DNA of 64,000 bases, from the IMG/VR virus record IMGVR_UViG_3300036770_006296, positions 124,001-188,000 of that record. One strand, given 5' to 3'. Shown in pieces: positions 2,371 through 56,153 of this stretch (position 1 is its first letter; each line of letters starts with the position of its first letter). The translations under genes and the position numbers were made by a program. Below the pieces are notes generated by a model. It did no database searches and was not told the DNA's origin. It was given only the letters and a program-made list of their open reading frames with translations.

Positions 2371-2880
2371 ATGAAACACATTAAGCTATTTGAAAGTTTT
2401 GGTATAAAATACAAGGTGATTGCAGTTAATATGGAAACCAGAGAAGCTGTGGGTGTGTTTCCTTCGTATCGAGATTTAGAGGATAATGCTAAAAAAGGTG
2501 CTTCCATGTTAAGTAGATTTGGAGCGGTAGAAGGAGCCGAAGATATCTATGATAGTCTTAATCCGAAAGCAACTGATCAGAGTTATTATTTTGTTTACCC
2601 TATGATAGATATACCAGATGATCATGACATTGTTGTTTGTAATAACTCTTCAGGAACTCCTGAGATATCTACTATGTCATCTAGGGATTTAAAAGAACCT
2701 GCTGTGGGTGATTCTTCTATGTATAATTGGTATACGAATGATGATGGTAGTGTTCATAATGTTTATTATAGAGTAGACAGAAATTCTGGAAAATTTGTAA
2801 TGGTGGGAGCGTATGGACATGTTGATAGAATGAGTCCAGATGAGATAGTTGAAATGTATAACTACGGCGCATCACTTTAG
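2371..2880 (+). CDS. Hypothetical protein, CTS-like N-terminus, internal KGASMLSRFG motif
   Basis: MKHIKLFESF; KKGASMLSRFG encoded at about 2491-2523. Confidence 0.8.
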   Translation: MKHIKLFESFGIKYKVIAVNMETREAVGVFPSYRDLEDNAKKGASMLSRFGAVEGAEDIYDSLNPKATDQSYYFVYPMIDIPDDHDIVVCNNSSGTPEISTMSSRDLKEPAVGDSSMYNWYTNDDGSVHNVYYRVDRNSGKFVMVGAYGHVDRMSPDEIVEMYNYGASL

Positions 2881-2906
2881 ATATATAGAAAAATAAATAT
2901 AAATAA

Positions 2907-3812
2907 ATGAAAAATAAATTTACATTGTTAGCCGTGGCTCTCTTGATGTTTACAAGCTGCGGTATTTTAAAAAAATCATCCTATTCCCCCCCACCTTCTG
3001 GACAGGTACTTACTGGTGTATTGAACACTGTGATTCAAAGCGAGGCGGTTCAGAACTATCAATTTGTAATTGAGGATGGGTGCACGCCTTCAGTTCTTAA
3101 TGATCTTGAATTTTGTAACTCTGTAAAGAGCAAGAATGATATAACAACATCTGTAGTAGATCAAGCGTGTGTTGATGCTTGTAATGTTGCTTATGATATT
3201 TGTCATGGCGGATGCTCCACTATCGACTGGACTTGTAACAACTGTTGCACTAAGGAGTGTAAGAAAGGAAGGGATCTATGTAAAGATGCCTGTGGCTATT
3301 TAAACGTTAAGATTGGATATTACGAATACCAGGTGATTAATGCTAAGGGGCTAGGAGCTCTTAGAGTTACTAGTGTGACTGATCCGGTTGTTGATCCTAA
3401 TAACGACACTTTGTTTAGCGTGAATATCACTATGGATGTACCCGCTGAGGTGACATCCAAAGTTCATTATGAATTTCAAATTGATGGCACTCCTGCTATT
3501 AAAGGAGATATGACACTTTCCACTACTGGGGTGTCTGCAAAAGGAACTGGAATTCTTAAAGATAGATGTGGTGATGGCTACTACTTGGAGATCACTACAT
3601 TAACTATTGATATACCGGAGAACATATTTGATAGTAACGAGTTAACTAAGATAGCTGAAGAGCTTATGATTGCTGTTTCCGATCTCACATTTGGGACTGT
3701 TGATCTGAGAAAAAAACTGATGGATAAATTAAATGACACTGTAAGTAAGCAAGTGATGAAAGCTCTTAACGAAGTGCTAGATGACACTAAGATTGCTCCT
3801 GCTGGTTGCTGA
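2907..3812 (+). CDS. Cys-rich lipoprotein, possible TULIP/BPI-like C-terminal fold
   Basis: Signal peptide with lipobox LLMFTS-C; dense Cys cluster; beta-rich body ending in long helix (LRKKLMDKLNDTVSKQVMKALNEVL). Confidence 0.7.
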   Translation: MKNKFTLLAVALLMFTSCGILKKSSYSPPPSGQVLTGVLNTVIQSEAVQNYQFVIEDGCTPSVLNDLEFCNSVKSKNDITTSVVDQACVDACNVAYDICHGGCSTIDWTCNNCCTKECKKGRDLCKDACGYLNVKIGYYEYQVINAKGLGALRVTSVTDPVVDPNNDTLFSVNITMDVPAEVTSKVHYEFQIDGTPAIKGDMTLSTTGVSAKGTGILKDRCGDGYYLEITTLTIDIPENIFDSNELTKIAEELMIAVSDLTFGTVDLRKKLMDKLNDTVSKQVMKALNEVLDDTKIAPAGC

Positions 3813-3834
3813 GAAATTCCTTACGTATTTTATG

Positions 3835-3862
3835 AAAATCCCGCACATAGCGGGATTTTTTG
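3835..3862 (+). terminator. Rho-independent terminator
   Basis: AAAATCCCGC-ACATA-GCGGGATTTT followed by further T residues. Confidence 0.8.
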
Positions 3863-3877
3863 TTTGTATATGATTTA

Positions 3878-3915
3878 GAATCATTTTTTTTATCTCTTTG
3901 AATTTTCTATCTTTG
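3878..3915 (+). promoter_or_regulatory. Putative early promoter (representative of 9 copies)
   Basis: GAATCATTTTTTT followed exactly 30 nt later by TATCTTTG (Bacteroidota -7 consensus TAnnTTTG); same geometry at 4281, 18581, 21274, 23699, 24651, 34561, 39148, 56810. Confidence 0.7.
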
Positions 3916-3929
3916 GTAAAAACACAGAT

Positions 3930-4280
3930 ATGGCTTTAAATTATGATCTTAGAGAGATAAAGAGTTATAAGAGACTTTTTGAAAAATCTACAGAAACTGG
4001 AGGATCCAAAATGAAGGATGTTCCAAGGACTATAGTCATGAGCACTATAAGTGTGGGGATGAGAGAAATCACCAAGGATAATTATAGAAAATTCTACAAT
4101 CGGCTTAGTCTGCTTGAGAATGTTTATGGGCATTTTTTCTACGTGAGGAGGAGGGGAGGTAAAATGATTCCTCGACCTATTACTTTAGGTGAAGTGGAGA
4201 GAATGATAGGACTGAAGACTAATGCTTCTGAAATTTCGAGAACTAAGTTCTTAAGTAGAATTGATAAGGATAAATTTTAA
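3930..4280 (+). CDS. Hypothetical protein
   Basis: 116-aa ORF directly behind early-type promoter. Confidence 0.75.
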   Translation: MALNYDLREIKSYKRLFEKSTETGGSKMKDVPRTIVMSTISVGMREITKDNYRKFYNRLSLLENVYGHFFYVRRRGGKMIPRPITLGEVERMIGLKTNASEISRTKFLSRIDKDKF

Positions 4281-5593: not shown

Positions 5594-6011
5594 GGGCCCG
5601 CTTTGGATTTGACAGGCGGAGGTAGTTCTTTGAAATGATGCAGGCAGGGTTAGATTGGAAATCCTTAATCACCTATCAAACAATAAACGCAAACGTTTAC
5701 AACGCAGAGGATATGATGAGTATCCCAACTTCTATTACTCGCGTAGCGGTAGCAGAAGAGGCTGAGTTGCTAATGGCAGCTTAACCGGCGGGCCGCACCG
5801 GCCTAGGAACAGAAAGGTGATGGTGGAGTCAGGTCTTACCTTAAAGACCGAAACGGAAATTCGGTTCATCCCGAAGAGTACACAGACCGAGCATTAAGTT
5901 TGTAATAAAAGAAATGCAAAAAAGTTTGTCCGTGTCGAATAACGGAATAAGCCTGTGAATGAGTTTCTTGAGCATTCGATCTGGACGAGGGTTCGACCCC
6001 CTCCGGGTCCA
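5594..6011 (+). ncRNA. ssrA: tmRNA
   Basis: 5' GGGCCCG pairs with 3' CGGGUCC-A (G3.U70 alanine identity); GGAUUUGAC 5' motif; T-arm GAGGG-TTCGACC-CCCTC; resume context AATAAAC-GCA; tag ORF 5689-5784 ANVYNAEDMMSIPTSITRVAVAEEAELLMAA*; CCA not encoded. Confidence 0.95.
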
Positions 6012-6029
6012 CTAGATTTAATCCCACTC

Positions 6030-17138: not shown

Positions 17139-17164
17139 AGGATATATAATATTATATTTATAAA

Positions 17165-18061
17165 ATGGAAAAAAGAGTAAAGAGTTTCACACAATTTTTT
17201 GAAAGCACCTCCTCTGGAAATAATCAAAGCTATACATATTCTATATTTATAGAAGCAGCTGAGGAGTATGGATATCCAATTTTTGTTTTAAAGGAGAGTG
17301 GAGATCTTTTCGACGTCGATGGGAATCTTCTTGATGCTCCTGATGTGGATGATTTATTTGAAGAGTATATGGATGCTGAACATGGGCCTATGAATGGGAT
17401 TGATGGTTTTGGGGACCTTGTTGATGCAGTTGAATATTATTTAGAGGATAGATCTGAAGAAAATTTGGAAGGTATAGATTCTTGGCTAGACACTTTAGGT
17501 ATAGATGGGACGGATCCAGAGAAACTAGCGGATTCGTATGAGGGGGACAACTCATATTGGAACGAAACAGTATCTAAGTTCAACTCAAATATGAGAATTC
17601 AATTTGATGGTGATTATTTTGGAGAATTCGGAAAAAAAGCATGGAATTTTTTAGTTCTTTCTCCAGAAAGTCTAGATCCTGAACTTTATGGTCAGGATGC
17701 TATACATAACACTTCTCCTTGCTTCGATGATTTCTTCGATGAGTGTCCTTTTAATTTGTGTTATAATAATGATTCTGATATTTTGTATACATGGTCAGAT
17801 GCAGGAAATCATAAATATGAATTCTTAGAGACAGGGTTAATGAAGCAGGATCTACAATTACCAATTATTGATGTCCTATTAAAGATATTAAATAGTGATA
17901 GAACTGAGATAATTACTCAATTAATTAAAAATTTCCTTTCAAAACAAACGGCAAGCCAATTATATAAGGAGATAATACAAAGATTACAAGAAGAAGGAAA
18001 CTCTAAAATAATTAGCACAATAAAGGGAGCGAGAATGCTGGGAAGATTCGGTGTTATTTAA
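17165..18061 (+). CDS. Acidic hypothetical protein, CTS-like N-terminus and C-terminal KGARMLGRFG motif
   Basis: MEKRVKSFTQFFES; GGATATATA at 17140. Confidence 0.8.
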   Translation: MEKRVKSFTQFFESTSSGNNQSYTYSIFIEAAEEYGYPIFVLKESGDLFDVDGNLLDAPDVDDLFEEYMDAEHGPMNGIDGFGDLVDAVEYYLEDRSEENLEGIDSWLDTLGIDGTDPEKLADSYEGDNSYWNETVSKFNSNMRIQFDGDYFGEFGKKAWNFLVLSPESLDPELYGQDAIHNTSPCFDDFFDECPFNLCYNNDSDILYTWSDAGNHKYEFLETGLMKQDLQLPIIDVLLKILNSDRTEIITQLIKNFLSKQTASQLYKEIIQRLQEEGNSKIISTIKGARMLGRFGVI

Positions 18062-22222: not shown

Positions 22223-22348
22223 AGTCAGGTGGCGGAATTGGTAGACGCATAAATAAAGGTTAACAGTAAGGATAACGTAGAGTAACCTTGAAATACCCAT
22301 AAGTATAGCTCATAAGTTATCATACAGGTTCGAATCCTGTCCTGACTA
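22223..22348 (+). ncRNA. tRNA-like RNA with non-canonical, expanded central region
   Basis: Acceptor AGTCAGG/CCTGACT plus discriminator A; D-arm GCG-GAATTGGTAGA-CGC; T-arm ACAGG-TTCGAAT-CCTGT; 126 nt total with 75-nt centre. Confidence 0.75.
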
Positions 22349-27487: not shown

Positions 27488-27694
27488 ATGATAGCATATA
27501 CAATTTCTGTCATCTTATTTACCCTTATAATAGCATCTGGAATTTTCTTTTGGGTAGTATCGATGTTTACTGGAAAGGTAGAAAAGCCAATTCTATCCCT
27601 AATAGGATATGTATTTTGGCCAATAAGTCTTGTTTTTATATGGATTTATGCCTATTTTTACAATAAATACCAGAAGGGAAGAAAGGATATATAA
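27488..27694 (+). CDS. Small membrane protein (2 TM)
   Basis: Hydrophobic; YVFWPISL motif. Confidence 0.65.
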   Translation: MIAYTISVILFTLIIASGIFFWVVSMFTGKVEKPILSLIGYVFWPISLVFIWIYAYFYNKYQKGRKDI

Positions 27695-27698
27695 ATCT

Positions 27699-28382
27699 AT
27701 GAAGAGGATAAAACTTTTTGAAAATTTTGACAATGAAGGGAAGTACTTATGGCCTGAAGCGGCGCTGTGGATAGAAGAACTTCATCCAGAAGAAATATGT
27801 TTTTTAGCTCTTTATGTTTCAATTGTAGAATACAACAAAAATCTTCCCTATAACAGAAGTACAGAAGATCTGCTTTTTCCTATAAAAACCGATTATAAAA
27901 GTTATGAATTAGAACCGGATTCTTATGACGATGAAGATGGAATTTCTAATTTTGAACTCTATTATGAAATACCATCAAAGAACAAAGAAAATTGTATATT
28001 TTCTATTGATGTTACAGGCAAAGGACATTTCACCCAAATTAGAAGAGGTGGATATATGGAGCCAGACGAAGGGGGTGAACCTATCCTTGATTCAATAGAA
28101 TTTGATTCTGCTTACTATTTAGATTCCAAAGAGGAGACGGAAATAAATTTTTCTGATAACTCTTATATTTTTAAATCTGACATTCTAACAAAAAAAGATC
28201 TAACTAACATAATAGAGTATGCCGCAGCTCAAAGAATAGAAGCTGATGATAATACGGATACTCATAAGCCTTTTATTCCACAAAGATTAATGGACAAGTG
28301 TCAAGAAATTAGAAAGAATCATCCGGATTCAGTAAAAGGTGGTAATTTGCTGAACAGATTTGGAATTTTGGGAACAAACTAG
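27699..28382 (+). CDS. Acidic hypothetical protein, CTS-like N-terminus and C-terminal KGGNLLNRFG motif
   Basis: Start moved to ATG 27699 (MKRIKLFENF) behind GGATATATA. Confidence 0.8.
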   Translation: MKRIKLFENFDNEGKYLWPEAALWIEELHPEEICFLALYVSIVEYNKNLPYNRSTEDLLFPIKTDYKSYELEPDSYDDEDGISNFELYYEIPSKNKENCIFSIDVTGKGHFTQIRRGGYMEPDEGGEPILDSIEFDSAYYLDSKEETEINFSDNSYIFKSDILTKKDLTNIIEYAAAQRIEADDNTDTHKPFIPQRLMDKCQEIRKNHPDSVKGGNLLNRFGILGTN

Positions 28383-28416: not shown

Positions 28417-28674
28417 ATGAAAAATATATTTTTAGCTCTATCTTTATTTGTTTCTTTATTATCTTTTTCGCAAGATTATAAATTCAACAAATTATCTGTT
28501 GTTTCCCCTAATAGGGATACTCTCTGGCTTCTAAATGACCCGTCGGGAAGGCTAATTGCTTATTCTTGGGAGCTAGAACAAAATCTACCTGAGAAAAAAC
28601 CAGTAATTATTCTTGTTGAATCATTACCAACTATCGAGAAAAAAAAGAAAAAAGGATATATAGAAGGTAATTAA
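28417..28674 (+). CDS. Small secreted protein
   Basis: MKNIFLALSLFVSLLSFSQ, Bacteroidota-like signal peptide. Confidence 0.65.
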   Translation: MKNIFLALSLFVSLLSFSQDYKFNKLSVVSPNRDTLWLLNDPSGRLIAYSWELEQNLPEKKPVIILVESLPTIEKKKKKGYIEGN

Positions 28675-28682
28675 AAACCTTT

Positions 28683-29075
28683 ATGAGACATATACGATTA
28701 TTTGAAAATTTCGACCAGGATAAAACAGTAGACTCATCTGGATTATTATTTGATTGGATTCCCTTTGATACGGAAGTTAATAATCCAATTAATTCTTCAG
28801 TCCCTACAGAAATAACTCCACAGAAACTTATAGAGTATTGCAACGCTAATCCGGAGATAGGTAAAGTAGGTTTGTATATTGCGCATAAAAAAAATCCTGC
28901 TGGGGGATTTACTAGATATGTAACCACTTCAACAAATCCTTTGTTATTAGAATCGGCAATGTTTGATAGCGAGTTTAACAAGATTAATGATGTGAAAGGA
29001 ATAAGTGCAGCATCTCTTGATTCATTTGGGAAGGGAGCTTCAATGATGAACAGATTCGGATTATTCGACAAGTAA
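28683..29075 (+). CDS. Hypothetical protein, CTS-like N-terminus and C-terminal KGASMMNRFG motif
   Basis: MRHIRLFENF; GGATATATA at 28654. Confidence 0.8.
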   Translation: MRHIRLFENFDQDKTVDSSGLLFDWIPFDTEVNNPINSSVPTEITPQKLIEYCNANPEIGKVGLYIAHKKNPAGGFTRYVTTSTNPLLLESAMFDSEFNKINDVKGISAASLDSFGKGASMMNRFGLFDK

Positions 29076-29103
29076 TTATAAGTTATACATATTAAAAAAT
29101 ATT

Positions 29104-29699: not shown

Positions 29700-29723
29700 G
29701 TATTTTCTTGTTAATAAAATATT

Positions 29724-29753
29724 AGCCGGCTTCACATTAAGCCGGCTTTTTTT
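29724..29753 (+). terminator. Rho-independent terminator
   Basis: AGCCGGCTT-CACATT-AAGCCGGCT plus T tract. Confidence 0.85.
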
Positions 29754-29805
29754 GCGGGTTTTTTTAAGGCGGGGGGATATATAACCAGTAAATAATTACT
29801 AATTG

Positions 29806-31245: not shown

Positions 31246-31560
31246 TTATTTCATCTGGTTGTATATTTTTTGCAAATCCCCAACAATCCAGTCTTCGGGG
31301 TATCCATCATCTTTAGAATTTTCTATAGCATCACTTATTATTGAGATGTATTTATACTCCTCGCTTCTACGATTAAATTTAGGAGTGTTTTCTTGACCAT
31401 TATAGTAGTTTAGTATATCTTTGATTGTGGATTTTAAAACATAAAGATCCGCGCCAAGTTCTATAGCTTTATTTATTTTTTTAGAAATAGCTGTGTAAGG
31501 ATCTTCTGATCCTGGATGGAATTCGTATAATTTTAAAAATTCTTTGTATTTAGTTAGCAT
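31246..31560 (-). CDS. Hypothetical protein, CTS-like N-terminus (paralog of next gene)
   Basis: MLTKYKEFLKLYEFHPG. Confidence 0.75.
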   Translation of the reverse strand: MLTKYKEFLKLYEFHPGSEDPYTAISKKINKAIELGADLYVLKSTIKDILNYYNGQENTPKFNRRSEEYKYISIISDAIENSKDDGYPEDWIVGDLQKIYNQMK

Positions 31561-42705: not shown

Positions 42706-44472
42706 ATGTCTACTCTATCTAAAATCTCTCTGGTATTATCTGCTTTAATAATGTCTATTTATTTTAGTATACAATCTCTATTAGTTTTCAATTATATCGA
42801 TTATACGGAATCTTTGGGTAGATTTGAATATGGATGTTTCGTTTTATTTGTCCCACTTTTTTCGATAGTTGTTAGAGAGTTTATAATAAAAAATAAGAGG
42901 AGTATTAAATTAAATATCTATGGTAAAAAATTAAATGACGTTCTTGTGAAGCAGTCGCATAATAGATTATTCTATAATGGAAATCTATCAGAGGCTGCTA
43001 AAGAATTAACTAAAGAGGTCACACAATCCATTAATGTTGAGAGATGCTCAGTTTGGCTATACAATAGGGATAAAACATCAATAGTTTGCCAACAGCTTTA
43101 TATTAAGTCAGAGTACACTTGGTATCAGGGATCTGAATTACTCGAGAAAGACTTTAGGCCCTATTTTGATGCTTTGAAAAATAATCCTGTCATTGTAGCA
43201 AATAATGCAGAGAAACATCCCTCTACATCTTGCTTTAGTGAAGTTTATTTAAAACCATTGGGCATAAAATCGATGTTAGATGTACCTATCCTGTTTAAAG
43301 GTGATGTAATAGGAGTAATATGTATAGAGAGCTTAGTAAAAAAAGAATGGTGTGAATTCGAGATTAATTTTTCCAAGTTGCTCTCTTCCTTATATACTTT
43401 TTCTTATTCAGTAAAAGAAAACAAAAAACAAGATCAAAAAATAGATGACATTAATAATTTTATAGATGAAGCTGCCCTTGTTTCTAAAACAGACGCAAAG
43501 GGAAAAATTGTATATGTGAATAAAAAATTCGAGGAGGTATCAGGATGGAGTCTGAAAGAAGTAATAGGTAAGGACCACAATATAGTTAATTCAGGTGAAC
43601 ATCCCAAGGAAATGTGGGCAGAAATGTATAAGAGTGTTTTAGTAGATAAAAATATTTGGAATAGGGTTATTACAAACAAAGCAAAAGATGGACATTTATA
43701 CCATGTGGACACTTATATAAAAGCGGAATTCGACACGGAGACTGGAGATCTAATAGGATTTATTTCTATCAGGCAGGATGTAAGTAAAATAGTATATACA
43801 TTACAAGAGATAGACAAGAAAAATACTTATTTAGAACATGCTGCTAAAATAATTAGACATGACATGCACTCGGGAATAAACACCTATATTCCAAGGGGGA
43901 TTAGCTCACTAGAAAGAAGACTTTCCGACGAAGATATAAAAAATCTTAAAATAGAAGCTCCATTAAAAATGATTAAAGAAGGGCTTAGACATACTCAAAA
44001 GGTATATAAAGGAGTTTATGAGTTTACTAATCTTGTTAAAAAGGACGCAGCCCTTAACAAGGATGAAATAGATCTAAAGTATATCCTCGACGATTATCTT
44101 TCTTCGACTGCTTATAAAAGCCAGGTTGATATATCAAACTTAGGAAAGTTTAGTGTCAATGAGGCTCTTTTTTGCACTGCAATTGATAATTTAATAAGGA
44201 ACGGACTTAAATATAATGATAGTAACAACAAATCTGTAAAAATATCAAGAATAGGAAATATTATTTATGTTGAAGACAATGGTAGAGGCTTAACATCTGA
44301 AGAATTTAAGACTCTTTCTAAACCATATACTAGGAAGGAGGGTCAAAAAGAAACCGGTACTGGCTTAGGATTAAATATATGTATATCAATACTCAAAGAA
44401 CACGGATTTTCAGTCGATTGTGAAAAAAAGGTTGAAGGCGGATCTAGAATAAAAATAAAGTTAGATAAATGA
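42706..44472 (+). CDS. Sensor histidine kinase (2 TM-GAF-PAS-HisKA-HATPase)
   Basis: GAF ERCSVWL...LDVPI...IGVICIE; PAS VNKKFEEVSGW...HNIVNSGEH...NKAKDG; H box IIRHDMHSG; N box DNLIRNGLKY; G1 VEDNGRG; G2 GTGLGL. Confidence 0.92.
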   Translation: MSTLSKISLVLSALIMSIYFSIQSLLVFNYIDYTESLGRFEYGCFVLFVPLFSIVVREFIIKNKRSIKLNIYGKKLNDVLVKQSHNRLFYNGNLSEAAKELTKEVTQSINVERCSVWLYNRDKTSIVCQQLYIKSEYTWYQGSELLEKDFRPYFDALKNNPVIVANNAEKHPSTSCFSEVYLKPLGIKSMLDVPILFKGDVIGVICIESLVKKEWCEFEINFSKLLSSLYTFSYSVKENKKQDQKIDDINNFIDEAALVSKTDAKGKIVYVNKKFEEVSGWSLKEVIGKDHNIVNSGEHPKEMWAEMYKSVLVDKNIWNRVITNKAKDGHLYHVDTYIKAEFDTETGDLIGFISIRQDVSKIVYTLQEIDKKNTYLEHAAKIIRHDMHSGINTYIPRGISSLERRLSDEDIKNLKIEAPLKMIKEGLRHTQKVYKGVYEFTNLVKKDAALNKDEIDLKYILDDYLSSTAYKSQVDISNLGKFSVNEALFCTAIDNLIRNGLKYNDSNNKSVKISRIGNIIYVEDNGRGLTSEEFKTLSKPYTRKEGQKETGTGLGLNICISILKEHGFSVDCEKKVEGGSRIKIKLDK

Positions 44473-45074
44473 AAAAAATATTTTTAATTATTATCCTATT
44501 GGGGATAAGGGGATTTTGCTTTTCTCAAAACTTTTATCCGATACAAACAATTTTAAAAGGAGATTCTGTTGTTATATACACGCTAGAACAGTCTCAAGAT
44601 ATAAATCTAATGATACAGAATCAAAAATCATTAAATGTAAGCTATAAGAGCAAATATGAGCACTATCTAGGAAAAACAGACAGTTTAGAAAAAATAGTAG
44701 CTGCGCAACTGTACTTGATTGATAGCTTAAGATTAGTTCAAAAAAATCAAGATAGCTTGGAAAAAAAATTACACACAATAGAAAGTTGGTTAGTAAAAGC
44801 ATCAATCGATAACTCTTACCTCTATATGTCATGGCAGGATTCTAAAATTAAATCGGTGGACCTAACATTATATACTGTTCATTGCAGTATGCAAACAGGA
44901 ACGATAAGAATGGTTAGGAGAGGTCCTAATGATGAATTTTATACCTGGAAAGGAATAAACCACACAAGAAGAGAAAGCCCCTCCATTAACTGGGAATTAA
45001 AATATCCAGAGGAAGATAGGCCGATAGTTAATAATTTACCAGTAGATATCAAAATAAGTCAATATGTAAGATGA
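44469..45074 (+). CDS. Secreted/periplasmic hypothetical protein in two-component cluster
   Basis: Signal peptide ending FCFSQ; overlaps both kinase genes. Confidence 0.75.
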   Translation: MKKIFLIIILLGIRGFCFSQNFYPIQTILKGDSVVIYTLEQSQDINLMIQNQKSLNVSYKSKYEHYLGKTDSLEKIVAAQLYLIDSLRLVQKNQDSLEKKLHTIESWLVKASIDNSYLYMSWQDSKIKSVDLTLYTVHCSMQTGTIRMVRRGPNDEFYTWKGINHTRRESPSINWELKYPEEDRPIVNNLPVDIKISQYVR

Positions 45075-46510
45075 AAAAAATAGTGCTTTTAGTAGTAATA
45101 CTATTCTCTTTCCAGAGCTTTTCTACCGCTCAAGGAATAACCCCGAATAAAAAATCTATAGTTGAAGCTGTTTGGGATCAAGGAATACCAGTTTGTCCTG
45201 ATGACAAATACATATCTTCACTTATCGACAAAGTTGGATTTGATAATCTAAGAAATAATAAAAAACCTATTGATAAGAATGAAGCTAAATTGTGTAGGGA
45301 GATAGGGATTGCTTTTTACAATAGGGGAATGTATGAAGCTGCTGACTGGTATTTAGAAAGAGTCAGAGGATACGTTGAGGTTGTAGAACTCGAGCCGGAG
45401 GTGGTTTTTGAAACACCCAAGCAGGAAGAGGAAGAGGAGGATGTTTCTATAGATGATATAAAAAGTCTAGAAGCGGACAAGGAATTTTTACAAAATCTTC
45501 CTAAAAGTTACGACAACGTTTCTCCCGGTGACATGAAAAAGTTAGCGGACCAAATTGAAGACCAAATAAAAAAGCTCATTGCAGAAAAAGAAGCTTTATT
45601 AAAAAGAAATGCTCCTAAATCTGTTATAGATGCTAAGGATGCTGCTATAGGATCTTTAGGAAAAGAAAAAGAAATCATAGACCTATCTATAGAAAAAGAA
45701 GATTTAGAGGTAGAAGTAGTTGACTTAGAAGACGATAAAAAAGTATTAAGGAAATATTTAATAGGATCCGTTATAGGAATTATTATAGCTATTTTAGCAA
45801 TAATAGCTCTACTACAAAGGAAAACAATAAGAGTAAAAGACGTAGAGCTAGAAAAGCAGTTAGATGATATCAATAAGAAAAATACTTATCTTGAATATGC
45901 TGCTAGAATTATTAGACATGATATGCACAGTGGTATTAATACTTATATGCCTAGAGGCCTTTCCTCTCTACAGAAAAGAATGGATCAGGAAAAAATCGAT
46001 GAACTAAAGATCGGTCCTTCTTTAAAGATGATTTCAGAGGGATTAGCACACACCCAAAAGGTATATAAAAATGTATATGAATTTACAAATCTCGTAAAAG
46101 TTAAGGCAGATTTTAGTACTAAAGAAATAGATCTAAAGGAGGCTTTGGAGAAATATCTAGCTAACACCTCATACAGAAATCAAGTTGTAATAGATGATCT
46201 TGGTTTGGTAAATGCTAATGAGCAATTGTTTTGTAATGCAATAGATAATCTGATTAAAAATGGCCTCAAATACAACGAGAAAAACGACAAATGTGTTAAG
46301 ATATATAAGGAAGTAGATGTAATAGTTGTTGAAGATAATGGTATAGGATTAACGTCTAAAAAATTCGAAGAATTAATCAAAAAAGGCATTGATACAGAAT
46401 CTGATACCGGTATTGGATTAAGTATTACAAAAGCAATTATTGAAGAACATGGCTATTCCATCTTTTGTGAGAAAGTTGAGAATGGCACAAAAATGAAAAT
46501 AAAAATATAA
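45071..46510 (+). CDS. Sensor histidine kinase (signal peptide, coiled coil, TM, HisKA, HATPase)
   Basis: IIRHDMHSGINTY; DNLIKNGLKY; VEDNGIG; GIGLSI; kinase core closely similar to 42706 gene. Confidence 0.9.
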   Translation: MKKIVLLVVILFSFQSFSTAQGITPNKKSIVEAVWDQGIPVCPDDKYISSLIDKVGFDNLRNNKKPIDKNEAKLCREIGIAFYNRGMYEAADWYLERVRGYVEVVELEPEVVFETPKQEEEEEDVSIDDIKSLEADKEFLQNLPKSYDNVSPGDMKKLADQIEDQIKKLIAEKEALLKRNAPKSVIDAKDAAIGSLGKEKEIIDLSIEKEDLEVEVVDLEDDKKVLRKYLIGSVIGIIIAILAIIALLQRKTIRVKDVELEKQLDDINKKNTYLEYAARIIRHDMHSGINTYMPRGLSSLQKRMDQEKIDELKIGPSLKMISEGLAHTQKVYKNVYEFTNLVKVKADFSTKEIDLKEALEKYLANTSYRNQVVIDDLGLVNANEQLFCNAIDNLIKNGLKYNEKNDKCVKIYKEVDVIVVEDNGIGLTSKKFEELIKKGIDTESDTGIGLSITKAIIEEHGYSIFCEKVENGTKMKIKI

Positions 46511-46511
46511 A

Positions 46512-46943
46512 ATGATTAATTCTATACTATTAGTTGATGATGAGGATTTATTCCACTTAGTTTTTGAAGATGCCTGCAGTCTTTTGGATATAACACTTTC
46601 TCTTGAAAGTCTAACTTCTGCTGATGAAGCAGAGAAACTGTTTAAAGCATGGCACAAAGAAGCCGATGGAAAACCTGAGTGTGTGTTTGTAGATCTTAAT
46701 ATAATAGGTTCTTCTTTCGATGGCATAGAGCTAATAAGAAAAATAAATTTTGAATACGGTAATCATGTTGTTATCGGTATTATCTCCTCATCAAACGAAC
46801 CAGAGGAACAATCAAAAGCTTTACAGGCCGGAGCTCAGTTTTGGATAATAAAATCCGACGACATAGAACCTAGGTTAGAGGATTTTAAAAAAGATTATGA
46901 GGGATATAAAAACAGAACAAATTCGTTCAAGGTTTATAAATAG
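46512..46943 (+). CDS. Single-domain response regulator (receiver)
   Basis: ILLVDDE; VFVDLNI phospho-Asp; IISSS; IIKS; no output domain. Confidence 0.9.
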   Translation: MINSILLVDDEDLFHLVFEDACSLLDITLSLESLTSADEAEKLFKAWHKEADGKPECVFVDLNIIGSSFDGIELIRKINFEYGNHVVIGIISSSNEPEEQSKALQAGAQFWIIKSDDIEPRLEDFKKDYEGYKNRTNSFKVYK

Positions 46944-46948
46944 AATAT

Positions 46949-47626
46949 ATGAAGCTAAACAAAGAAACTAGGGGACAGCTTCTAGATTTATGGAAGAAAA
47001 GAAAAATAAGTCTAAGTGGTAATATCCTAAAGGTTATAGATGCTGATGGTGACGAGGAGCTGAAAAAATATTTAGACGAATCTATCCAAAGAGACAACGA
47101 AGTTAGAAGAAAAAGACTGGATGTTACTAAGAAGGTGCAATCACAAAATGATGAGCTAATAGTTTGGAAAGAAGAGAATGAAAAGATACAAAAAGAACTT
47201 CTAGATTCTCTTAAAAAAACTGAGGAGTCAATGCAGGAGTCAGAAAGACTCAGAGAAGAAGCAGAAAAAGCCAAAGAAGAAGCAGAAGCTTCAATGTTAG
47301 AAGCTCAATCTGCTAAAGAAGAAGCTGAAATAGCTAGAGAAGAAGCAGAAAATGCTAAAAACGCTGCAGAAAATGATCTAGATCTGATACAGAAAAAAAC
47401 GCAGTTTGAATTAATAGGAACTATTATTAGAGTTGCTCTTTGGGTAATTCTTGGAGTAGGTGTTGTAACAACTATGGTTTATCTTATAGCTCTTTTTACT
47501 GGAGTTGATACTGCAGTTATTGGATCAACTTGGTCAAATATAGTTGGTATACTATTGACCAACTCATTTAGCATAGTTGGTACTATAATGGGTGTAAAAT
47601 ACGCATCTGAAAAGGAAAGTAAATAG
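46949..47626 (+). CDS. Coiled-coil protein with two C-terminal TM helices
   Basis: EAEKAKEEAE-type repeats then two hydrophobic segments; co-oriented with the two-component genes. Confidence 0.8.
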   Translation: MKLNKETRGQLLDLWKKRKISLSGNILKVIDADGDEELKKYLDESIQRDNEVRRKRLDVTKKVQSQNDELIVWKEENEKIQKELLDSLKKTEESMQESERLREEAEKAKEEAEASMLEAQSAKEEAEIAREEAENAKNAAENDLDLIQKKTQFELIGTIIRVALWVILGVGVVTTMVYLIALFTGVDTAVIGSTWSNIVGILLTNSFSIVGTIMGVKYASEKESK

Positions 47627-48196
47627 TTATTCAAATCTTTTTTCTTCCGCTATAGAATTTAAATATTCGTTCAGTTCTAGTTCTTTTCCTCCTTTACTTA
47701 CAAACAGAGTATATTTATTATTATCCGCTTCCTCATCGGTCGTTCTATCTATGACATCGTCAGCTCCTAGTTTGAATTTTATTCTATTTGCTAAATCTGA
47801 TCTTGTTTTTTCGTCATTGAATTCCCATTGATATTCAGAAATAATGTTTGTTATTTCCTCTCTAATTATATCCGATTCAACACTAGAGGGAAGCAAATTA
47901 TTAAGATATACTACATTTGATAAATGCGATGCAATAGTAGGAACTAGATACATTTTCATCATAAGAACCGGGGTCATAGAAACTTCATCTATCCAAGACT
48001 CAAATTCAAAATCCATGATCTTGTCTTTGTGTGTATGTATGTAATCCTCGATAACTTCGATACATCCCTCATAGTCCTCTATAAGATCCTCTATAGTAAA
48101 AGGAAAAAACTTTTTAATTGTTTTTGGTCCTCTCTGAAGAGATTCTATTTTTTCAAATATTGAATCTCTAATATCAACTTTTATATTTTTTTCCAT
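47627..48196 (-). CDS. Hypothetical protein
   Basis: 189-aa ORF; WEFNDEKTR segment. Confidence 0.7.
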   Translation of the reverse strand: MEKNIKVDIRDSIFEKIESLQRGPKTIKKFFPFTIEDLIEDYEGCIEVIEDYIHTHKDKIMDFEFESWIDEVSMTPVLMMKMYLVPTIASHLSNVVYLNNLLPSSVESDIIREEITNIISEYQWEFNDEKTRSDLANRIKFKLGADDVIDRTTDEEADNNKYTLFVSKGGKELELNEYLNSIAEEKRFE

Positions 48197-53977: not shown

Positions 53978-54222
53978 TTTTTAAATACGATATCCCAGTT
54001 TTTATCAAACATTTTATCAATAGTTTCCTTATGATTTGGATCATCTTCTAACAATCCCATTAGATCCTTATACATAAGATAAGCAAATTTTAGATCCTTT
54101 AGATATCCCTCGCAATAATCCCCATTTGGACTTTGCTTACAAGAAATTGCTGAACAGCATCCGTCTTCTCCACAAGCATCACAAACTGAACAATATGGAG
54201 ATTTATATTTCTCTGGATTCAT
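53974..54222 (-). CDS. Small Cys-rich hypothetical protein
   Basis: CSVCDACGEDGCCSAISC. Confidence 0.65.
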   Translation of the reverse strand: MNPEKYKSPYCSVCDACGEDGCCSAISCKQSPNGDYCEGYLKDLKFAYLMYKDLMGLLEDDPNHKETIDKMFDKNWDIVFKK

Positions 54223-54228
54223 AATTTA

Positions 54229-54585
54229 TTAATAAAGATCCTCACTATATAAAGTTCTACTTCCACCTCTTGATCTGTCATTCAGTTGACCCGCGGATTC
54301 AGCAATATTATATCCTTCTTCTCTATCAACAAAACGATTTTTATTAGTTAGAAATCCTTGGATTGATTCTCCAACTTCACCTGGTATGTCTCTTAACCCT
54401 GTAATTGCAACCATTTGATATATGCAATTGCCGTGTCTCCACCCGGATACAACAACACCCCTATCGACATTGTATGGTCTAAAACCTCTATGTTCTAAAA
54501 TATCTGGTTTCTTTAAGGGAAGATCCTTGTACCAAACAGCAGCACATAAAATATACTCGTCCATTATTTTATCTTTAAAAGCCAA
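54229..54585 (-). CDS. Hypothetical phage protein
   Basis: YILCAAVWY...GWRHG...QGFLTNKNRFVDR...LYSEDL. Confidence 0.75.
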   Translation of the reverse strand: MAFKDKIMDEYILCAAVWYKDLPLKKPDILEHRGFRPYNVDRGVVVSGWRHGNCIYQMVAITGLRDIPGEVGESIQGFLTNKNRFVDREEGYNIAESAGQLNDRSRGGSRTLYSEDLY

Positions 54586-54839
54586 TTAGCTAAATGTTCA
54601 TCAATAGTTAATTCGTCCCACTCATAATCAGTGAAACCTTTCCTGCAATATTCACCAAAGTTTATAAGATCTACTGCAGTAAAACCCGGAGTTCTTTTTA
54701 AAACATCCTCGACAACTTCGGGAGATGCCTCCTCACCTTTTGCCTCTATATCTTTCCATTCTTTTTCTATAGATTCAGAATCCATAGAGTTAAATTTCTC
54801 TGCTAACATAGCAGTTAGCTTCATTTCATTTAGGTTCAT
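54564..54839 (-). CDS. Hypothetical protein
   Basis: Overlapping series. Confidence 0.65.
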   Translation of the reverse strand: MNLNEMKLTAMLAEKFNSMDSESIEKEWKDIEAKGEEASPEVVEDVLKRTPGFTAVDLINFGEYCRKGFTDYEWDELTIDEHLANWLLKIK

Positions 54840-55305
54840 ATTCTTTTATTTGTTTTATGTATGCTTCGTATACTGTTGTTCTAGTTGATCCGGTGTTTTC
54901 GTATTTGTCTACAGGAATCCATCTTGTCTCCATAGTGTCTCCTTCTTTTCTTTCACATGGAAATGCTACTATATTCGTGTCTTCTATGTCAGGTCCTTGA
55001 CAAAAAAGCTCTTTCCAAGTTGATTTCTCTAGATAATTTCTTAGAGCGCTCCATGCTTCCATATCGTGTGAGAGCCACATGTTGTCGTCGTGATTCATCG
55101 CATAATCAATCTGTCTTTGTATCTCCTCTGCTAGAGATTTCCCTTGTTGTTCTGAAAGTCTTTTACCAAAGTTTCTAACTAGATCCGACGGGTACATTGC
55201 AGATGCTATTGTGTATCTTCCGCAGAAGTATCTCAGAGAAGACCAAGTAAGATCCCATTCCCAGTCGCTCAATGGTTTAATCTTTTGCTTTTCCTTTGTT
55301 TTCAT
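54826..55305 (-). CDS. Hypothetical protein
   Basis: SLRYFCGRYTIAS motif; overlapping series. Confidence 0.7.
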   Translation of the reverse strand: MKTKEKQKIKPLSDWEWDLTWSSLRYFCGRYTIASAMYPSDLVRNFGKRLSEQQGKSLAEEIQRQIDYAMNHDDNMWLSHDMEAWSALRNYLEKSTWKELFCQGPDIEDTNIVAFPCERKEGDTMETRWIPVDKYENTGSTRTTVYEAYIKQIKEYEPK

Positions 55306-55366
55306 AAAATTTATACTAAAAATGAAGGTTTAAGTTTCTTCTGTAAAAATAAGAGATAAATATAAG

Positions 55367-55693
55367 ATGGAAGGATATGTTTATCTGATTGTTGAGGGTG
55401 ATCATAATGGGGAAGAGAAGTACAAGATAGGAGTAACTAAGAACGACCCCCAGAAAAGACTTAAGAAATTAAAAACGGGTAATTCAAATCAGCTAGATAT
55501 CCTTAAACTTTATAAGAGCAAGCACTATAAAAAGGTGGAAAAAATTCTACACCGAAAATTTATAAGTCAAAGGACATTATCAGGGAACGAGTTTTTTTAT
55601 CTAAGTGACGAACAGGTGTTTGGATTTATAAAGTATTGTGAAGAAGCAGAACACATTATAGAGTCGCTTCAGGATAATCCATTTTTTAAGTAG
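55367..55693 (+). CDS. T5orf172/MUG113-like GIY-YIG-fold protein
   Basis: GYVYLI...YKIGVT...KRLKKL.TGN...E.ILH...EFF.L. Confidence 0.8.
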   Translation: MEGYVYLIVEGDHNGEEKYKIGVTKNDPQKRLKKLKTGNSNQLDILKLYKSKHYKKVEKILHRKFISQRTLSGNEFFYLSDEQVFGFIKYCEEAEHIIESLQDNPFFK

Positions 55694-56153
55694 AGCTAAG
55701 TCCAAAACGGTTAAGTAAAGCCGCACCTTTACATCTTAGTGCTTCTAATATTTTTTCGTCTAGCACTTTATCTAGTTCTTCCCTCGGATTTTCCCTATAT
55801 AGCCTAGCCATTTCTAAAGGATATTCATTAAACGATTTTATAAGATCACATAGGCGATCATATATTTCTGTGCTTCTGCCATCATTTCTATCTGCTATGA
55901 TTTCTCTCCAATTTTCTAGGCAGTCTAGTAATTCTGCCCTTTCATATAGATTAGAGTTTTCCTCCTCTAGGTCTTCAAATTTTGATTTTAGATTATCGAG
56001 GTCTCGCTCTAAATACTCAATCCTCTCCTTTGCTTCCAAAAGTTCAGATAGGTAGTCTTCTTTTGTTTGATTTAATTCTTGATTCTCGTCTTCGAGGCCC
56101 TCTATATAAAGAATAAGCTCCTCAACCTTTTTTTCTTCTAATTTATTAGTCAT
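55686..56153 (-). CDS. Coiled-coil protein with C-terminal KGAALLNRFG motif
   Basis: Heptad-rich acidic N-terminal half; no CTS-like N-terminus. Confidence 0.75.
   Translation of the reverse strand: MTNKLEEKKVEELILYIEGLEDENQELNQTKEDYLSELLEAKERIEYLERDLDNLKSKFEDLEEENSNLYERAELLDCLENWREIIADRNDGRSTEIYDRLCDLIKSFNEYPLEMARLYRENPREELDKVLDEKILEALRCKGAALLNRFGLSST

What the first reader, a model, noticed from the sequence alone, without database searches (positions are those of the whole stretch)
2494..55730. Recurrent KG[AG]x[ML][ML]xRFG motif, four times at the extreme C-terminus
Seen: KGARMLGRFGVI* (18023-18061), KGGNLLNRFGILGTN* (to 28382), KGASMMNRFGLFDK* (to 29075), KGAALLNRFGLSST* (minus strand, to 55686), and internal KGASMLSRFG (2494-2523) in otherwise unrelated, mostly acidic proteins. 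Four of the five also carry the N-terminal tag. I recognise no named family. Inference: a second sorting or docking signal, for example a basic amphipathic membrane- or capsid-binding helix, a common partner-binding motif or a degron.
Basis: partly seen in the sequence, partly recalled or inferred. Interest (0 to 1): 0.72.

Follow-up and report, generated by a model that had tools for sequence, protein, structure and literature searches.

The report
Shared docking tail on phage proteins
A ten-residue peptide, KG-x-x-(M/L/I)-L-x-(R/K/N)-F-G, sits at the very end of many unrelated proteins of one clade of T4-like jumbo phages. It behaves like a portable address label read by one common, still unidentified partner.

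Summary
All five window sites are confirmed (5 found, 0.13 expected by chance). The window is part of a 206.6-kb IMG/VR contig with 15 canonical copies. Related contigs have 4 and 7. About 4 Mb of more distant relatives and 2.6 Mb of huge phages have none. Fifteen of 19 copies lie within 6 residues of the stop codon (P about 6e-19). Two sit 10 residues from the N-terminus. Two are internal, and one of those is a 23-residue loop insertion that the orthologues lack. Codons differ synonymously, so selection acts on the peptide. With the motif masked, the 19 carriers fall into at least 14 groups unrelated by BLAST, none with a named family. In orthologues the tail is better conserved than the rest of the protein. 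Each genome has its own "dialect" of the motif. I read it as a short helical docking motif for one shared receptor. It is carried both by late, N-tagged (probably head-packaged) proteins and by untagged proteins made from a second promoter class. The receptor is unknown and the single complex prediction gave no answer. Direct membrane binding (MinD-like), prohead cargo loading (encapsulin or T4 CTS-like) and clamp binding (T4 gp43-like tail) remain rivals. I rate it a new variant of a known kind.

The parts
2371..2880 (+). Carrier A (169 aa, pI 4.7), N-tag MKHIKLFESF. It carries the motif internally at residues 42-51.
   Evidence: no Pfam, PHROG or NCBIfam hit
2494..2523 (+). Internal motif copy KGASMLSRFG, flanked by acidic, polar sequence (DLEDNAK / AVEGAEDIY).
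   Evidence: HMM score 25.4
17141..17148 (+). GATATATA late-promoter-like box, 16 nt before the ATG of carrier B.
17165..18061 (+). Carrier B (298 aa, pI 4.1), loose N-tag MEKRVKSFTQFFES.
18023..18052 (+). C-terminal motif KGARMLGRFG, 2 residues before the stop.
27686..27693 (+). GATATATA box 5 nt before ATG 27699. This supports 27699 as the start of carrier C rather than the TTG at 27630.
27699..28382 (+). Carrier C (227 aa, pI about 4.7), N-tag MKRIKLFENF. Its 42%-identical G2 homologue ends in the decayed form KGHGLLNRF*.
28335..28364 (+). C-terminal motif KGGNLLNRFG, 5 residues before the stop.
28655..28662 (+). GATATATA box 20 nt before the ATG of carrier D.
28683..29075 (+). Carrier D (130 aa, pI 5.3), N-tag MRHIRLFENF. 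The G015 orthologue (34% identical) ends KGASLLKNFGISSLDDDAQG*. The antisense ORF 28631-29071 is spurious.
29031..29060 (+). C-terminal motif KGASMMNRFG, 4 residues before the stop.
55686..56153 (-). Carrier E (155 aa, pI 4.4): coiled-coil protein with no N-tag. A TAAATTTG box (Bacteroidota-type -7 box TAnnTTTG) lies about 13 nt upstream of its ATG.
55701..55730 (-). C-terminal motif KGAALLNRFG, 4 residues before the stop.

Best explanation
The motif K-G-(A/G/S)-x-(M/L/I)-L-x-(R/K/N)-F-G, usually followed by a hydrophobic residue and then F or I, is a portable short linear docking motif. It is a one-and-a-half-turn helix bounded by two glycines. It is displayed on a flexible terminus, or occasionally a surface loop, of many unrelated accessory proteins. 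Its M/L/F face, flanked by K1 and R8, would plug into a groove of one common protein receptor and so bring a varied set of proteins to the same place.

The phage is a T4-like jumbo phage, probably of a Bacteroidota host. Two sets of proteins carry the label. The first set is late proteins with a GATATATA promoter box and an N-terminal tag that resembles the T4 capsid-targeting sequence with an [L/I]-x-E protease-type site; these are probably packaged in the head and injected. The second set is untagged proteins expressed from a second promoter-like element that ends in a host-type -7 box. I therefore place the receptor most probably in the cytoplasm, or at the inner face of the membrane, of the infected cell. 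There, injected and newly made proteins would converge.

Shown: the motif exists, is selected at the peptide level, is portable, is restricted to one clade, evolves in concert within genomes, and spans two promoter classes. Inferred: helical docking, a single receptor, the timing of the two classes, packaging of tagged proteins, and the place of action. The receptor itself is not identified.
For: Enrichment and position: there are 15, 4 and 7 canonical copies in G1, G2 and G015, and none in about 4 Mb of relatives with 74% or lower polB identity, in 2.4 Mb of four huge phages (three uncultured, one Lak) or in a 0.2-Mb Chryseobacterium phage. Reversed-pattern controls gave 0-2 hits. Fifteen of 19 copies are within 6 aa of the C-terminus, binomial P 6e-19.

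Peptide-level selection: synonymous codon differences. In orthologues, motif identity is 0.82, against 0.54 for the rest of the protein and 0.27 for the preceding 30 aa. In the G1_079 family (75 clusters, 39-95% identity) nearly every full-length member keeps ...GKGxx[MIL]LKRFG[AG]F....

Portability: at least 14 groups unrelated by BLAST. There are N-terminal copies in G1_151 and G1_169. The copy in G1_119 is a 23-aa insertion absent from the G2, G015 and G030 orthologues. AlphaFold2 gives a confident core (most of it pLDDT 80-95), a low-confidence inserted loop, and a short helix exactly on KGERMLKR. LRR homologues in G015 lack the tail; those in G030 and G033 match only the LRR part and those genomes hold no motif copy.

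Concerted dialects: R at position 8 in 17/19 copies of G1+G2 against 0/7 in G015 (p 5e-5). M at position 5 in 13/15 copies of G1 against 1/11 elsewhere (p 1.7e-4). G at position 4 in 5/7 copies of G015 against 0/19 (p 3e-4). At least five orthologous carriers changed in parallel. A further genome (L502) lost K1 and R8 in 3 of 3 orthologous carriers.

Amphipathicity alone does not explain the conservation: the hydrophobic moment is no better than that of the motif's own shuffles.

Two expression classes. T4-like head genes gp23 and gp21 are present in G2. The N-tag resembles the T4 CTS (PMC8442874, PMC9026906).
Against: No receptor was found. The one complex prediction (G1_080 GAF protein + G1_077 + tail of G1_079) gave 'no answer'. 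A host-specific property other than a protein, such as membrane lipid composition, could also drive genome-wide dialects. The dialect statistics rest on three genomes plus one partial replicate, and copies within a genome are not fully independent. The 'late' and 'early' labels come from sequence motifs only; no transcript or virion data were used. The motif does resemble the experimentally proven membrane anchor of B. subtilis MinD (KGMMAKIKSFFG, PMC13537761). Packaging and injection of the tagged proteins is an analogy with T4, not an observation. ORF calls in G1, G2 and G015 are my own simple calls.
Confidence: 0.4

Rival explanations
1. Direct membrane anchor. The tail is a MinD-type membrane-targeting sequence: a short basic amphipathic helix that lies in the cytoplasmic leaflet of the inner membrane and brings the carriers to the membrane without any protein receptor.
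For: The proven B. subtilis MinD anchor is KGMMAKIKSFFG followed by VRS at the C-terminus, and it can be transplanted onto GFP (PMC13537761; PMC8155659). It has the same KG start, hydrophobic pair, basic residue, FG end and extreme C-terminal position. The hydrophobic moment of the 10-residue core averages 0.50, against 0.52 for the MinD anchor, with net charge +1 to +3. One carrier (E) is a coiled coil, which could give the avidity a weak anchor needs. The oldest carrier family is always encoded next to a membrane-anchored GAF protein.
Against: Mean hydrophobicity is lower than in MinD (about 0.25 against 0.43). The moment is not better than that of each motif's own shuffles, and sits only at the 40th-90th percentile of all proteome 12-mers. 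Near-invariance of G2, F9 and G10, and genome-specific preferences for M, I or L at position 5, are not expected for lipid binding. In L502 both basic residues K1 and R8 are lost in 3 of 3 carriers.
Confidence: 0.2
2. Prohead cargo-loading peptide. The tail docks on the scaffolding core or on the inner face of the T4-like major capsid protein and loads the carriers into the head. This would be a second capsid-targeting signal, analogous to encapsulin targeting peptides.
For: The lineage has a gp23-type capsid protein and a gp21-type prohead protease. About half of the carriers also carry the CTS-like N-tag and a late-type promoter box shared with the head genes. Encapsulin targeting peptides are about 10-residue C-terminal peptides, rich in G, S and L with a basic residue, that bind HK97-fold shells: PLTVGSLRRGG, consensus DGSLGIGSLKG (PMC7925596). 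Compare KGGSMLRRFG in G1_088. In T4, Alt has propeptides at both ends (PMC9026906). The N-terminal copies sit where other proteins have the N-tag.
Against: Six carriers have the other promoter class and no N-tag. Tagged proteins would not need a second packaging signal. No [L/I]-x-E site is consistently placed before the tail (read directly). No motif occurs in the head and replication module contigs. The capsid protein is not specific to the motif-bearing clade, although the motif is.
Confidence: 0.15
3. Sliding-clamp-binding tail. The motif is this lineage's version of the C-terminal clamp-interaction peptide of T4 gp43, gp55 and gp33, and tethers many proteins to the phage clamp on DNA.
For: T4 gp43 ends ...EEKASLDFLFG* and gp55 ends ...SPSLDFLYEAND*. 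A-S-(L/M)-x-x-x-F-G at the extreme C-terminus is shared with KGASMLSRFG. The distribution (mostly C-terminal, some N-terminal, few internal) is typical of PIP and clamp-binding motifs, which is established knowledge. Relatives encode gp44-type clamp loaders and a gp55-type sigma factor.
Against: The proteins expected to carry a clamp tail do not have the motif. polB ends ...NLLLVRALF*, the flap endonuclease ends ...GFDPFDLFK*, and the gp55-like sigma ends ...ENSVYNV*. No carrier has a DNA-metabolism domain. No clamp gene could be identified.
Confidence: 0.08
4. Degron or quality-control tag. The tail is recognised by a host or phage protease or unfoldase, so that early-acting proteins are removed on schedule.
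For: Terminal, exposed, portable peptides are the usual form of bacterial degrons, which is established knowledge. The genome encodes several AAA+ ATPases and even a tmRNA.
Against: There is no resemblance to known ClpX, ClpA or Lon tags. Conservation of an internal helix-like core, rather than of the last residues, is atypical. The distance to the C-terminus varies from 0 to 8 residues, and internal copies exist.
Confidence: 0.07

Closest known systems
T4 capsid targeting sequence (CTS, MKTYQEFIAE) of internal proteins IPI-III
   Same: It is a ~10-residue portable terminal peptide shared by otherwise unrelated, fast-evolving accessory proteins of a T4-type phage. It addresses them to one site (PMC3012670, PMC8442874, PMC9026906).
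   Different: The CTS is N-terminal and is cut off after Glu by the gp21 protease. It is the window's N-terminal tag (MKHIKLFENF) that resembles it, with hydrophobic residues at positions 4 and 7 and an L-x-E site. The KG..FG motif does not: it is mostly C-terminal, has no Glu, is also found on untagged proteins and is younger than the N-tag.
Encapsulin cargo-loading / targeting peptides
   Same: They are C-terminal peptides of about 10 residues after a flexible linker, built from small residues, two hydrophobic anchors and a basic residue. They are transplantable and system-specific in sequence (PMC7925596). The shell shares the HK97 fold with phage capsids.
   Different: The consensus differs (GSLxIGSLK/R against KGxxMLxRFG). 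No genetic linkage of the carriers to the capsid gene was seen. No evidence of encapsidation was obtained here.
MinD membrane-targeting sequence
   Same: It has the same KG...(K/R)-x-F-G architecture at the extreme C-terminus, is amphipathic and basic, and is transplantable (PMC13537761, PMC8155659).
   Different: The MinD anchor is a feature of one orthologous ATPase family and works through dimer avidity. Here one peptide sits on at least 14 unrelated families, is less hydrophobic and shows genome-specific dialects.
T4 gp43/gp55 clamp-interaction tails (and PIP / clamp-binding motifs in general)
   Same: They are extreme C-terminal A-S-L-x-x-x-F-G-like peptides on several different proteins of a T4-type phage, all binding one hub.
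   Different: This lineage's polymerase, flap endonuclease and late sigma factor lack the motif. The carriers have no DNA-related domains.
phiKZ early phage infection (EPI) vesicle recruitment
   Same: Injected virion proteins and specific early proteins converge on one site at the start of a jumbo-phage infection (bioRxiv 10.1101/2024.03.24.586471).
   Different: No linear signal is described there. The phage lineage is unrelated (chimallivirus) and so is the host.

Membership tests
T4-type capsid targeting sequence (CTS) | Located in the first ~10 residues of the precursor | tested here: not met
   15 of 19 copies are within 6 aa of the C-terminus. Only 2 are near the N-terminus, starting at residue 11.
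T4-type capsid targeting sequence (CTS) | Ends in a gp21-type cleavage site, (L/I)-x-E | tested here: not met
   The motif core has no Glu at a fixed position, and no consistent L/I-x-E lies just before it. The separate N-tag does have L-F-E, I-N-E or L-N-E.
T4-type capsid targeting sequence (CTS) | Directs the protein into the prohead core | not testable with these tools
   This needs virion proteomics or packaging assays.
MinD-type membrane targeting sequence | C-terminal amphipathic helix with basic residues at the interface | tested here: inconclusive
   Core hydrophobic moment is 0.50, against 0.52 for B. subtilis MinD, and charge is +1 to +3. However, it is not above the motif's own shuffles and its hydrophobicity is lower. 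A helix is predicted on the motif in G1_119, at low confidence.
MinD-type membrane targeting sequence | Carried by a MinD/ParA-type ATPase whose dimerisation provides avidity | tested here: not met
   The carriers tested have no ATPase or any named domain except LRR-like and coiled-coil segments.
MinD-type membrane targeting sequence | Binds lipid bilayers directly | not testable with these tools
   This needs liposome binding or localisation experiments.
Encapsulin targeting peptide | Short C-terminal peptide after a flexible linker on unrelated cargo proteins | tested here: met
   The 30 aa before the motif are the least conserved part (identity 0.27 and 0.23).
Encapsulin targeting peptide | GSL-type consensus (e.g. 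DGSLGIGSLKG, PLTVGSLRRGG) | tested here: not met
   The consensus here is KG[AGS]x[MLI]Lx[RKN]FG. Only the composition is similar (PMC7925596).
Encapsulin targeting peptide | Cargo genes in an operon with the shell gene, and binding to the shell interior | tested here: not met
   Operon linkage was tested and is not met: the carriers are scattered, none lies in the G2 head module or in the portal/sigma module contigs. Binding to the shell interior cannot be tested here.
T4-type clamp-interaction tail | Present at the C-terminus of the DNA polymerase and the late sigma factor | tested here: not met
   polB C-terminal fragment ends NLLLVRALF*. The gp55-like sigma ends ...ENSVYNV*. The FEN ends GFDPFDLFK*.
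T4-type clamp-interaction tail | A gp45-type clamp encoded by the phage | tested here: inconclusive
   PF02916 and T4 gp45 searches found nothing convincing in G1 or G2, and T4 gp45 found nothing convincing in G015. The clamp-loader module lies on other contigs, and a 197-aa candidate there is not gp45-like.
Curated C-terminal sorting signals (NCBIfam / Pfam, e.g. PEP-CTERM, LPXTG, T9SS CTD) | Match to a curated model; a transmembrane or beta-sandwich sorting domain | tested here: not met
   No Pfam, PHROG or NCBIfam hit covers the tails. The tail has no hydrophobic span.

The most novel reading that the evidence does not exclude
A tailed phage runs its own short-linear-motif addressing system. 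A clade-specific 10-residue label was acquired repeatedly by unrelated ORFan proteins, including by insertion into a loop, and it co-evolves with one receptor. It gathers capsid-injected and newly made effector proteins at a single hub in the freshly infected Bacteroidota cell. Alternatively, it is an encapsulin-style cargo-loading peptide working inside a T4-type capsid, which would link phage internal-protein packaging and encapsulin cargo loading mechanistically.
Probability: 0.25. Interest if true: 0.85.

Novelty: new variant of a known kind. Interest (0 to 1): 0.66.

Why it matters
Most genes of jumbo phages are ORFans with no handle for study. A shared address label groups about 15-20 such proteins per genome into one functional set. 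It also gives a direct experimental handle: a tail peptide can be used as bait, as a localisation tag, or as a tool to load or recruit foreign proteins. If the receptor is a host hub, the set is probably a host-takeover or anti-defence arsenal aimed at one site. If the receptor is the prohead, this would be a second capsid-targeting signal and a natural parallel to encapsulin cargo loading. The genome-specific dialects offer a rare case of motif-receptor co-evolution in phages that swap experiments could test.

Tried and rejected
**DNA or RNA repeat instead of a peptide.** Rejected: the codons differ synonymously.

**Chance.** Rejected by shuffles and reversed-pattern controls.

**Carriers are paralogues sharing a C-terminal domain.** Rejected: with the motif masked, BLAST links only three small families.

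**Named families.** None found in Pfam, PHROGs or NCBIfam. ESM Atlas look-alikes were uninformative.

**Mimicry of a cellular C-terminal motif.**
- A strict back-translated scan of 185,579 species genomes gave 108 hits. None lay at the end of a long ORF. They are off-frame or internal, for example in conserved Massilia proteins and recombinase-like proteins (my reading).
- The metagenome scan returned, as convincing C-terminal copies, only members of the phage's own clade.
- A tail-restricted protein search found only the LRR family's own relatives.

**My first DNA pattern required Arg at position 8.** It wrongly suggested that G015 lacks the motif. This was corrected with orthologue tails and a relaxed pattern.

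**Clamp hypothesis.** The clamp was not found and the polymerase, FEN and sigma tails differ.

**Receptor search by presence and absence.** This left 62 clade-specific G1 proteins, too many to resolve. Pfam on the ten best conserved gave SLT, CHAP, DUF4326 and a weak GAF.

**Complex prediction** of the syntenic TM+GAF protein plus the G1_077 nuclease-like protein (my reading of a PD-(D/E)xK-like motif; no database hit) with the G1_079 tail: no answer, so it counts as evidence neither way.

**AlphaFold2 of carrier D.** The model was too poor to use (pLDDT 46).

**Fold search with G1_119.** It found only uncharacterised relatives.

Full report
**1. What is in the window**

Four of them lie 2-5 residues before a stop codon, at the end of ORFs of 130-298 aa. 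One is internal, at residues 42-51 of a 169-aa protein. The carriers are acidic, with pI 4.1-5.3. Three start with M(K/R)(H/R)I(K/R)LFE(N/S)F, one with a looser version, and one has no tag.

Residue shuffles of the translated window give 0.13 matches to the loose pattern against 5 observed. The strict pattern never appeared in 300 shuffles. The five copies use different synonymous codons for K, G, A, L, R and F. What is conserved is therefore a peptide, not a nucleic-acid element.

**2. Genome context**

The window's own record is an 86-kb virus contig. A back-translated pattern search of IMG/VR found a 206,617-bp contig, called G1 here. Its positions 124001-188000 are 100% identical to the window.

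G1 has a family-B DNA polymerase split into two genes, topoisomerase II, ribonucleotide reductase, primase, helicases and tail-fibre proteins. The closest annotated relatives by polymerase are the 0.46-0.74-Mb "uncultured phage" genomes LR756500-4, the Lak megaphages of Prevotella and Chryseobacterium phages. A related 248-kb contig, G2, has a T4-type major capsid protein (Pfam Gp23) and a T4-type prohead protease (Peptidase_S77). More distant relatives have gp44, gp46/47 and gp55 homologues.

This is therefore a T4-like jumbo phage, most probably of a Bacteroidota host. The host is inferred from the relatives and from promoter-like boxes; it is not shown.

**3. Extent of the motif**

G1 holds 15 canonical copies:
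- 11 are C-terminal.
- 2 are internal.
- 2 are N-terminal. These read RKG(E/K)(A/S)ML(T/V)KFGVI and start at residue 11.

G2 holds 4 copies, all C-terminal.

A profile built from these copies separates 19 canonical hits (at least 19.8 bits) from a halo of decayed, mostly C-terminal variants. Examples are ...KGASMLAKFESF*...KGGSLLSRVGIY* and ...KGHGLLNRF*. Fifteen of the 19 lie within 6 residues of the C-terminus, with binomial P 6e-19.

With the motif masked, BLAST links only three small families among the 19. That leaves at least 14 unrelated groups. None matches a Pfam, PHROG or NCBIfam family. The only exceptions are sub-threshold LRR hits (three paralogues) and coiled-coil hits (carrier E).

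**4. Phylogenetic range**

My first pattern required Arg at position 8. It suggested that only genomes with at least 88% polB identity carry the motif.

Orthologue tails in contig G015 (84% polB identity, 191 kb) showed this was an artefact. G015 carries KGAGLLNKFGLFD*, KGAGMLKNFGVFGDDED*, KGASLLKNFGISS...*, KGSSLLGKFGIE*, KGIGLLGNFGI* and others.

A relaxed pattern (K-G-x-x-[MLI]-L-x-x-F-G) gives these counts:
- 14, 4 and 7 hits in G1, G2 and G015.
- 1-3 hits in four partial contigs of the same subclade.
- None except one out-of-frame match (it spans a stop codon) in about 4 Mb of relatives with 74% or lower polB identity.
- None in 2.4 Mb of huge phages or in the 0.2-Mb Chryseobacterium phage.
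- 2 reversed-pattern control hits in total.

The N-terminal tag is found in a wider set of relatives and is therefore older.

A strict scan of one genome per prokaryotic species found no copy at the end of a long ORF. The metagenome scan added only members of the same clade.

**5. Selection and portability**

In orthologue alignments the motif is better conserved than the rest of the protein, and much better than the 30 residues before it. The values are 0.82 / 0.54 / 0.27 for the G1_079 family and 0.60 / 0.32 / 0.23 for carrier D.

The G1_079 family has 75 sequence clusters down to 39% identity. Nearly every full-length member ends ...PPSLKxxDxGKGxx(M/I/L)LKRFG(A/G)F followed by an acidic tail. 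This is probably the oldest carrier.

Gains can also be seen directly. G1_119 has the motif inside a 23-residue insertion that its G2, G015 and G030 orthologues lack. AlphaFold2 models most of the core at pLDDT 80-95, the insertion below 50, and a short helix exactly on KGERMLKR. The LRR homologue in G015 ends after the repeats, without the tail; those in G030 and G033 align only over the repeats, and those genomes hold no motif copy.

Losses and decay are visible too.

**6. Genome-specific dialects**

- G1 prefers M at position 5 (13/15 copies), against 1/11 in G2+G015 (p 1.7e-4). In G2, 3 of 4 copies have I.
- G015 prefers G at position 4 (5/7 against 0/19, p 3e-4) and has no Arg at position 8 (0/7 against 17/19, p 5e-5).

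Arg8 is ancestral in the G1_079 family, present in 41 of the 43 members whose tail matched the motif pattern. At least five orthologous carriers therefore changed in parallel in the G015 lineage.

An independent partial replicate is contig L502. There, three orthologous carriers end QGSSILKGFGLF..., SGGSLLRTFGF* and RGANTLRKFGFN*. Both K1 and R8 are lost in all three.

Within a genome the copies differ in codon usage, so recent gene conversion is unlikely. Concerted change of many unrelated proteins points to one common selective partner.

**7. Two expression classes**

GATATATA lies 4-23 nt before the ATG of most of its roughly 50 occurrences per genome. These include the G2 head genes and the tail-fibre gene. 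It is tightly coupled to the N-terminal tag (odds ratio 11, p 1.6e-22). By analogy with the T4 late promoter TATAAATA, and given the gp55-type sigma factor in relatives, I take it as the late promoter.

The tag resembles the T4 capsid targeting sequence MKTYQEFIAE. It has hydrophobic residues at positions 4 and 7, the positions important for targeting in T4. It also has an (L/I)-x-E site of the gp21 type (L-F-E, I-N-E or L-N-E) (PMC8442874, PMC9026906, PMC3012670).

A second element is about 40 nt long and highly conserved: AATCATTTTTTTCTTTAAnTAGAATTTTCTAYATTTG. It ends in the Bacteroidota -7 box TAnnTTTG, a consensus I know from the established literature. It precedes 20 genes in G1. Six of these are carriers, none of them tagged.

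Among the window carriers, B, C and D have the late box, A has a variant (AATATATAA), and E has a TAAATTTG box. The label therefore spans both classes.

**8. Mechanism**

The peptide has helix propensity between two glycines, with M5, L6, F9 and the residue at +2 on one face and K1 and R8 beside it.

Its hydrophobic moment (0.50 for the core) equals that of the proven B. subtilis MinD anchor KGMMAKIKSFFG (0.52). However, it is not higher than that of its own shuffles, and its hydrophobicity is lower (PMC13537761). Amphipathicity alone therefore does not explain why G2, F9, G10 and the hydrophobic pair are nearly invariant.

Together with the dialects, this favours docking into a groove of one protein receptor. 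Late, tagged proteins (probably packaged and injected, as in T4) and untagged proteins of the other promoter class share the label. I therefore place the receptor most probably in the infected cell, where both sets would meet. phiKZ offers a precedent for such convergence at its early infection vesicle (bioRxiv 10.1101/2024.03.24.586471).

All of this paragraph is inference.

**9. Search for the receptor**

Sixty-two G1 proteins are shared with G2 and G015 but absent from three large motif-less relatives.

The most striking is a 202-aa protein with one N-terminal transmembrane helix and a GAF-like domain. By the positive-inside rule the domain would be cytoplasmic. This protein directly follows the G1_079 carrier in every genome examined. 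It stays 74-82% identical even where the carrier has dropped to 39%.

I tested it, together with the neighbouring G1_077, which I read as nuclease-like (a PD-(D/E)xK-like motif, no database hit), against the G1_079 tail. The tool returned "no answer", which is evidence neither way. The receptor remains unknown.

**10. Rivals**

*Lipid anchor (MinD-like).* See section 8. It remains plausible, because host lipid differences could also produce dialects.

*Prohead cargo loading.* The composition resembles encapsulin targeting peptides such as PLTVGSLRRGG and DGSLGIGSLKG (PMC7925596), and T4 Alt has propeptides at both ends (PMC9026906). Against this, the untagged second-class carriers, the redundancy with the N-tag and the absence of a protease site all count.

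*Clamp binding.* T4 gp43 ends KASLDFLFG* and gp55 ends SLDFLYEAND*, a striking likeness. But this lineage's polymerase, flap endonuclease and late sigma factor have other tails, and no clamp was found.

*Degron.* There is no positive evidence.

**11. Caveats**

- Gene calls in G1, G2 and G015 are my own longest-ORF calls.
- Promoter classes and their timing are inferred from sequence.
- The assignment of the portal/sigma/clamp-loader contigs L485 and L446 to the G2-like and G1-like genomes rests on sample of origin and on complementary gene content.
- The dialect tests treat copies as independent.

**12. Verdict**

The feature is real, strongly non-random and under selection. It is a portable terminal docking or sorting peptide specific to one jumbo-phage clade. 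Its kind is known (CTS, encapsulin peptides, clamp tails, MinD anchors), but this motif, its breadth of carriers and its concerted evolution are new. The receptor is the open question.

Noticed in passing
window 5594-6014 (+): A phage-encoded tmRNA gene. Rfam RF00023 scores 85 bits (gathering score 47) over the full-length model. ARAGORN predicts the tag peptide ANVYNAEDMMSIPTSITRVAVAEEAELLMAA.
   Followed up: partly
window 22223-22348 (+): A tRNA match (Rfam 40.6 bits) spanning 126 nt, which is longer than a normal tRNA, so it may contain an intron. ARAGORN did not call it.
   Followed up: no
window 232, 1323, 2880, 10772, 13580, 17141, 25782, 27686, 28655, 49743, 58916 and others (+ strand starts): GATATATA boxes lie 4-23 nt before start codons and are coupled to the N-terminal tag M(K/R)xI(K/R)xFExF or ..F..F.NE (odds ratio 11, p 1.6e-22). 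The same box precedes the T4-like head genes in G2. This is a probable late promoter with very short leaders. The tag resembles the T4 capsid targeting sequence with an (L/I)-x-E protease-type site.
   Followed up: partly
window 4083-4096 (-) and 31314-31327 (+); 18 more copies in G1, mostly at 85-117 kb: A roughly 40-nt, almost invariant element, AATCATTTTTTTCTTTAAnTAGAATTTTCTAYATTTG, lies 8-31 nt before start codons. It ends in a Bacteroidota-type -7 box (TAnnTTTG). This is a second promoter class, probably early or middle.
   Followed up: partly
window 31975-32955 (+): A deoxyhypusine synthase homologue (Pfam DS, E 6e-40), which is unusual in a phage.
   Followed up: no
window 42706-46943 (+): Two histidine kinases with signal-peptide-like N-termini, the first with GAF and PAS domains. 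They are followed by a small ORF whose N-terminus looks like a response-regulator receiver (my reading, not scanned), and they are separated by a 201-aa ORF. This is a phage-encoded two-component system, specific to the motif-bearing clade.
   Followed up: no
G1 68674-70010 (outside the window; loci L026, L040, L376, L367, L364, L494, L499, L502): A conserved two-gene module: the oldest carrier family (G1_079) is always followed within 15-50 nt by a 202-aa TM+GAF protein that evolves much more slowly (74% identity where the carrier is at 39%). A protein I read as PD-(D/E)xK nuclease-like (G1_077, no database hit) lies upstream on the opposite strand in G1, G2, G015 and G010, with a 335-aa ORF in the same place in L502.
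   Followed up: partly
G1 77597-81444 (-), outside the window: Eight tandem paralogues of about 150 aa (MTREEFI...KRLLNLMIKRGLFI*). They are present in G1, G2 and G015 and absent from the three motif-less relatives.
   Followed up: no
G1 28919-30325 and 46516-47685, outside the window: The family-B DNA polymerase is split into two genes 16 kb apart. The same arrangement is seen in G2.
   Followed up: no
window 28631-29071 (-): A 146-aa antisense ORF fully overlaps carrier D. It is very probably spurious, but it displaced the real gene in a longest-ORF gene call.
   Followed up: yes
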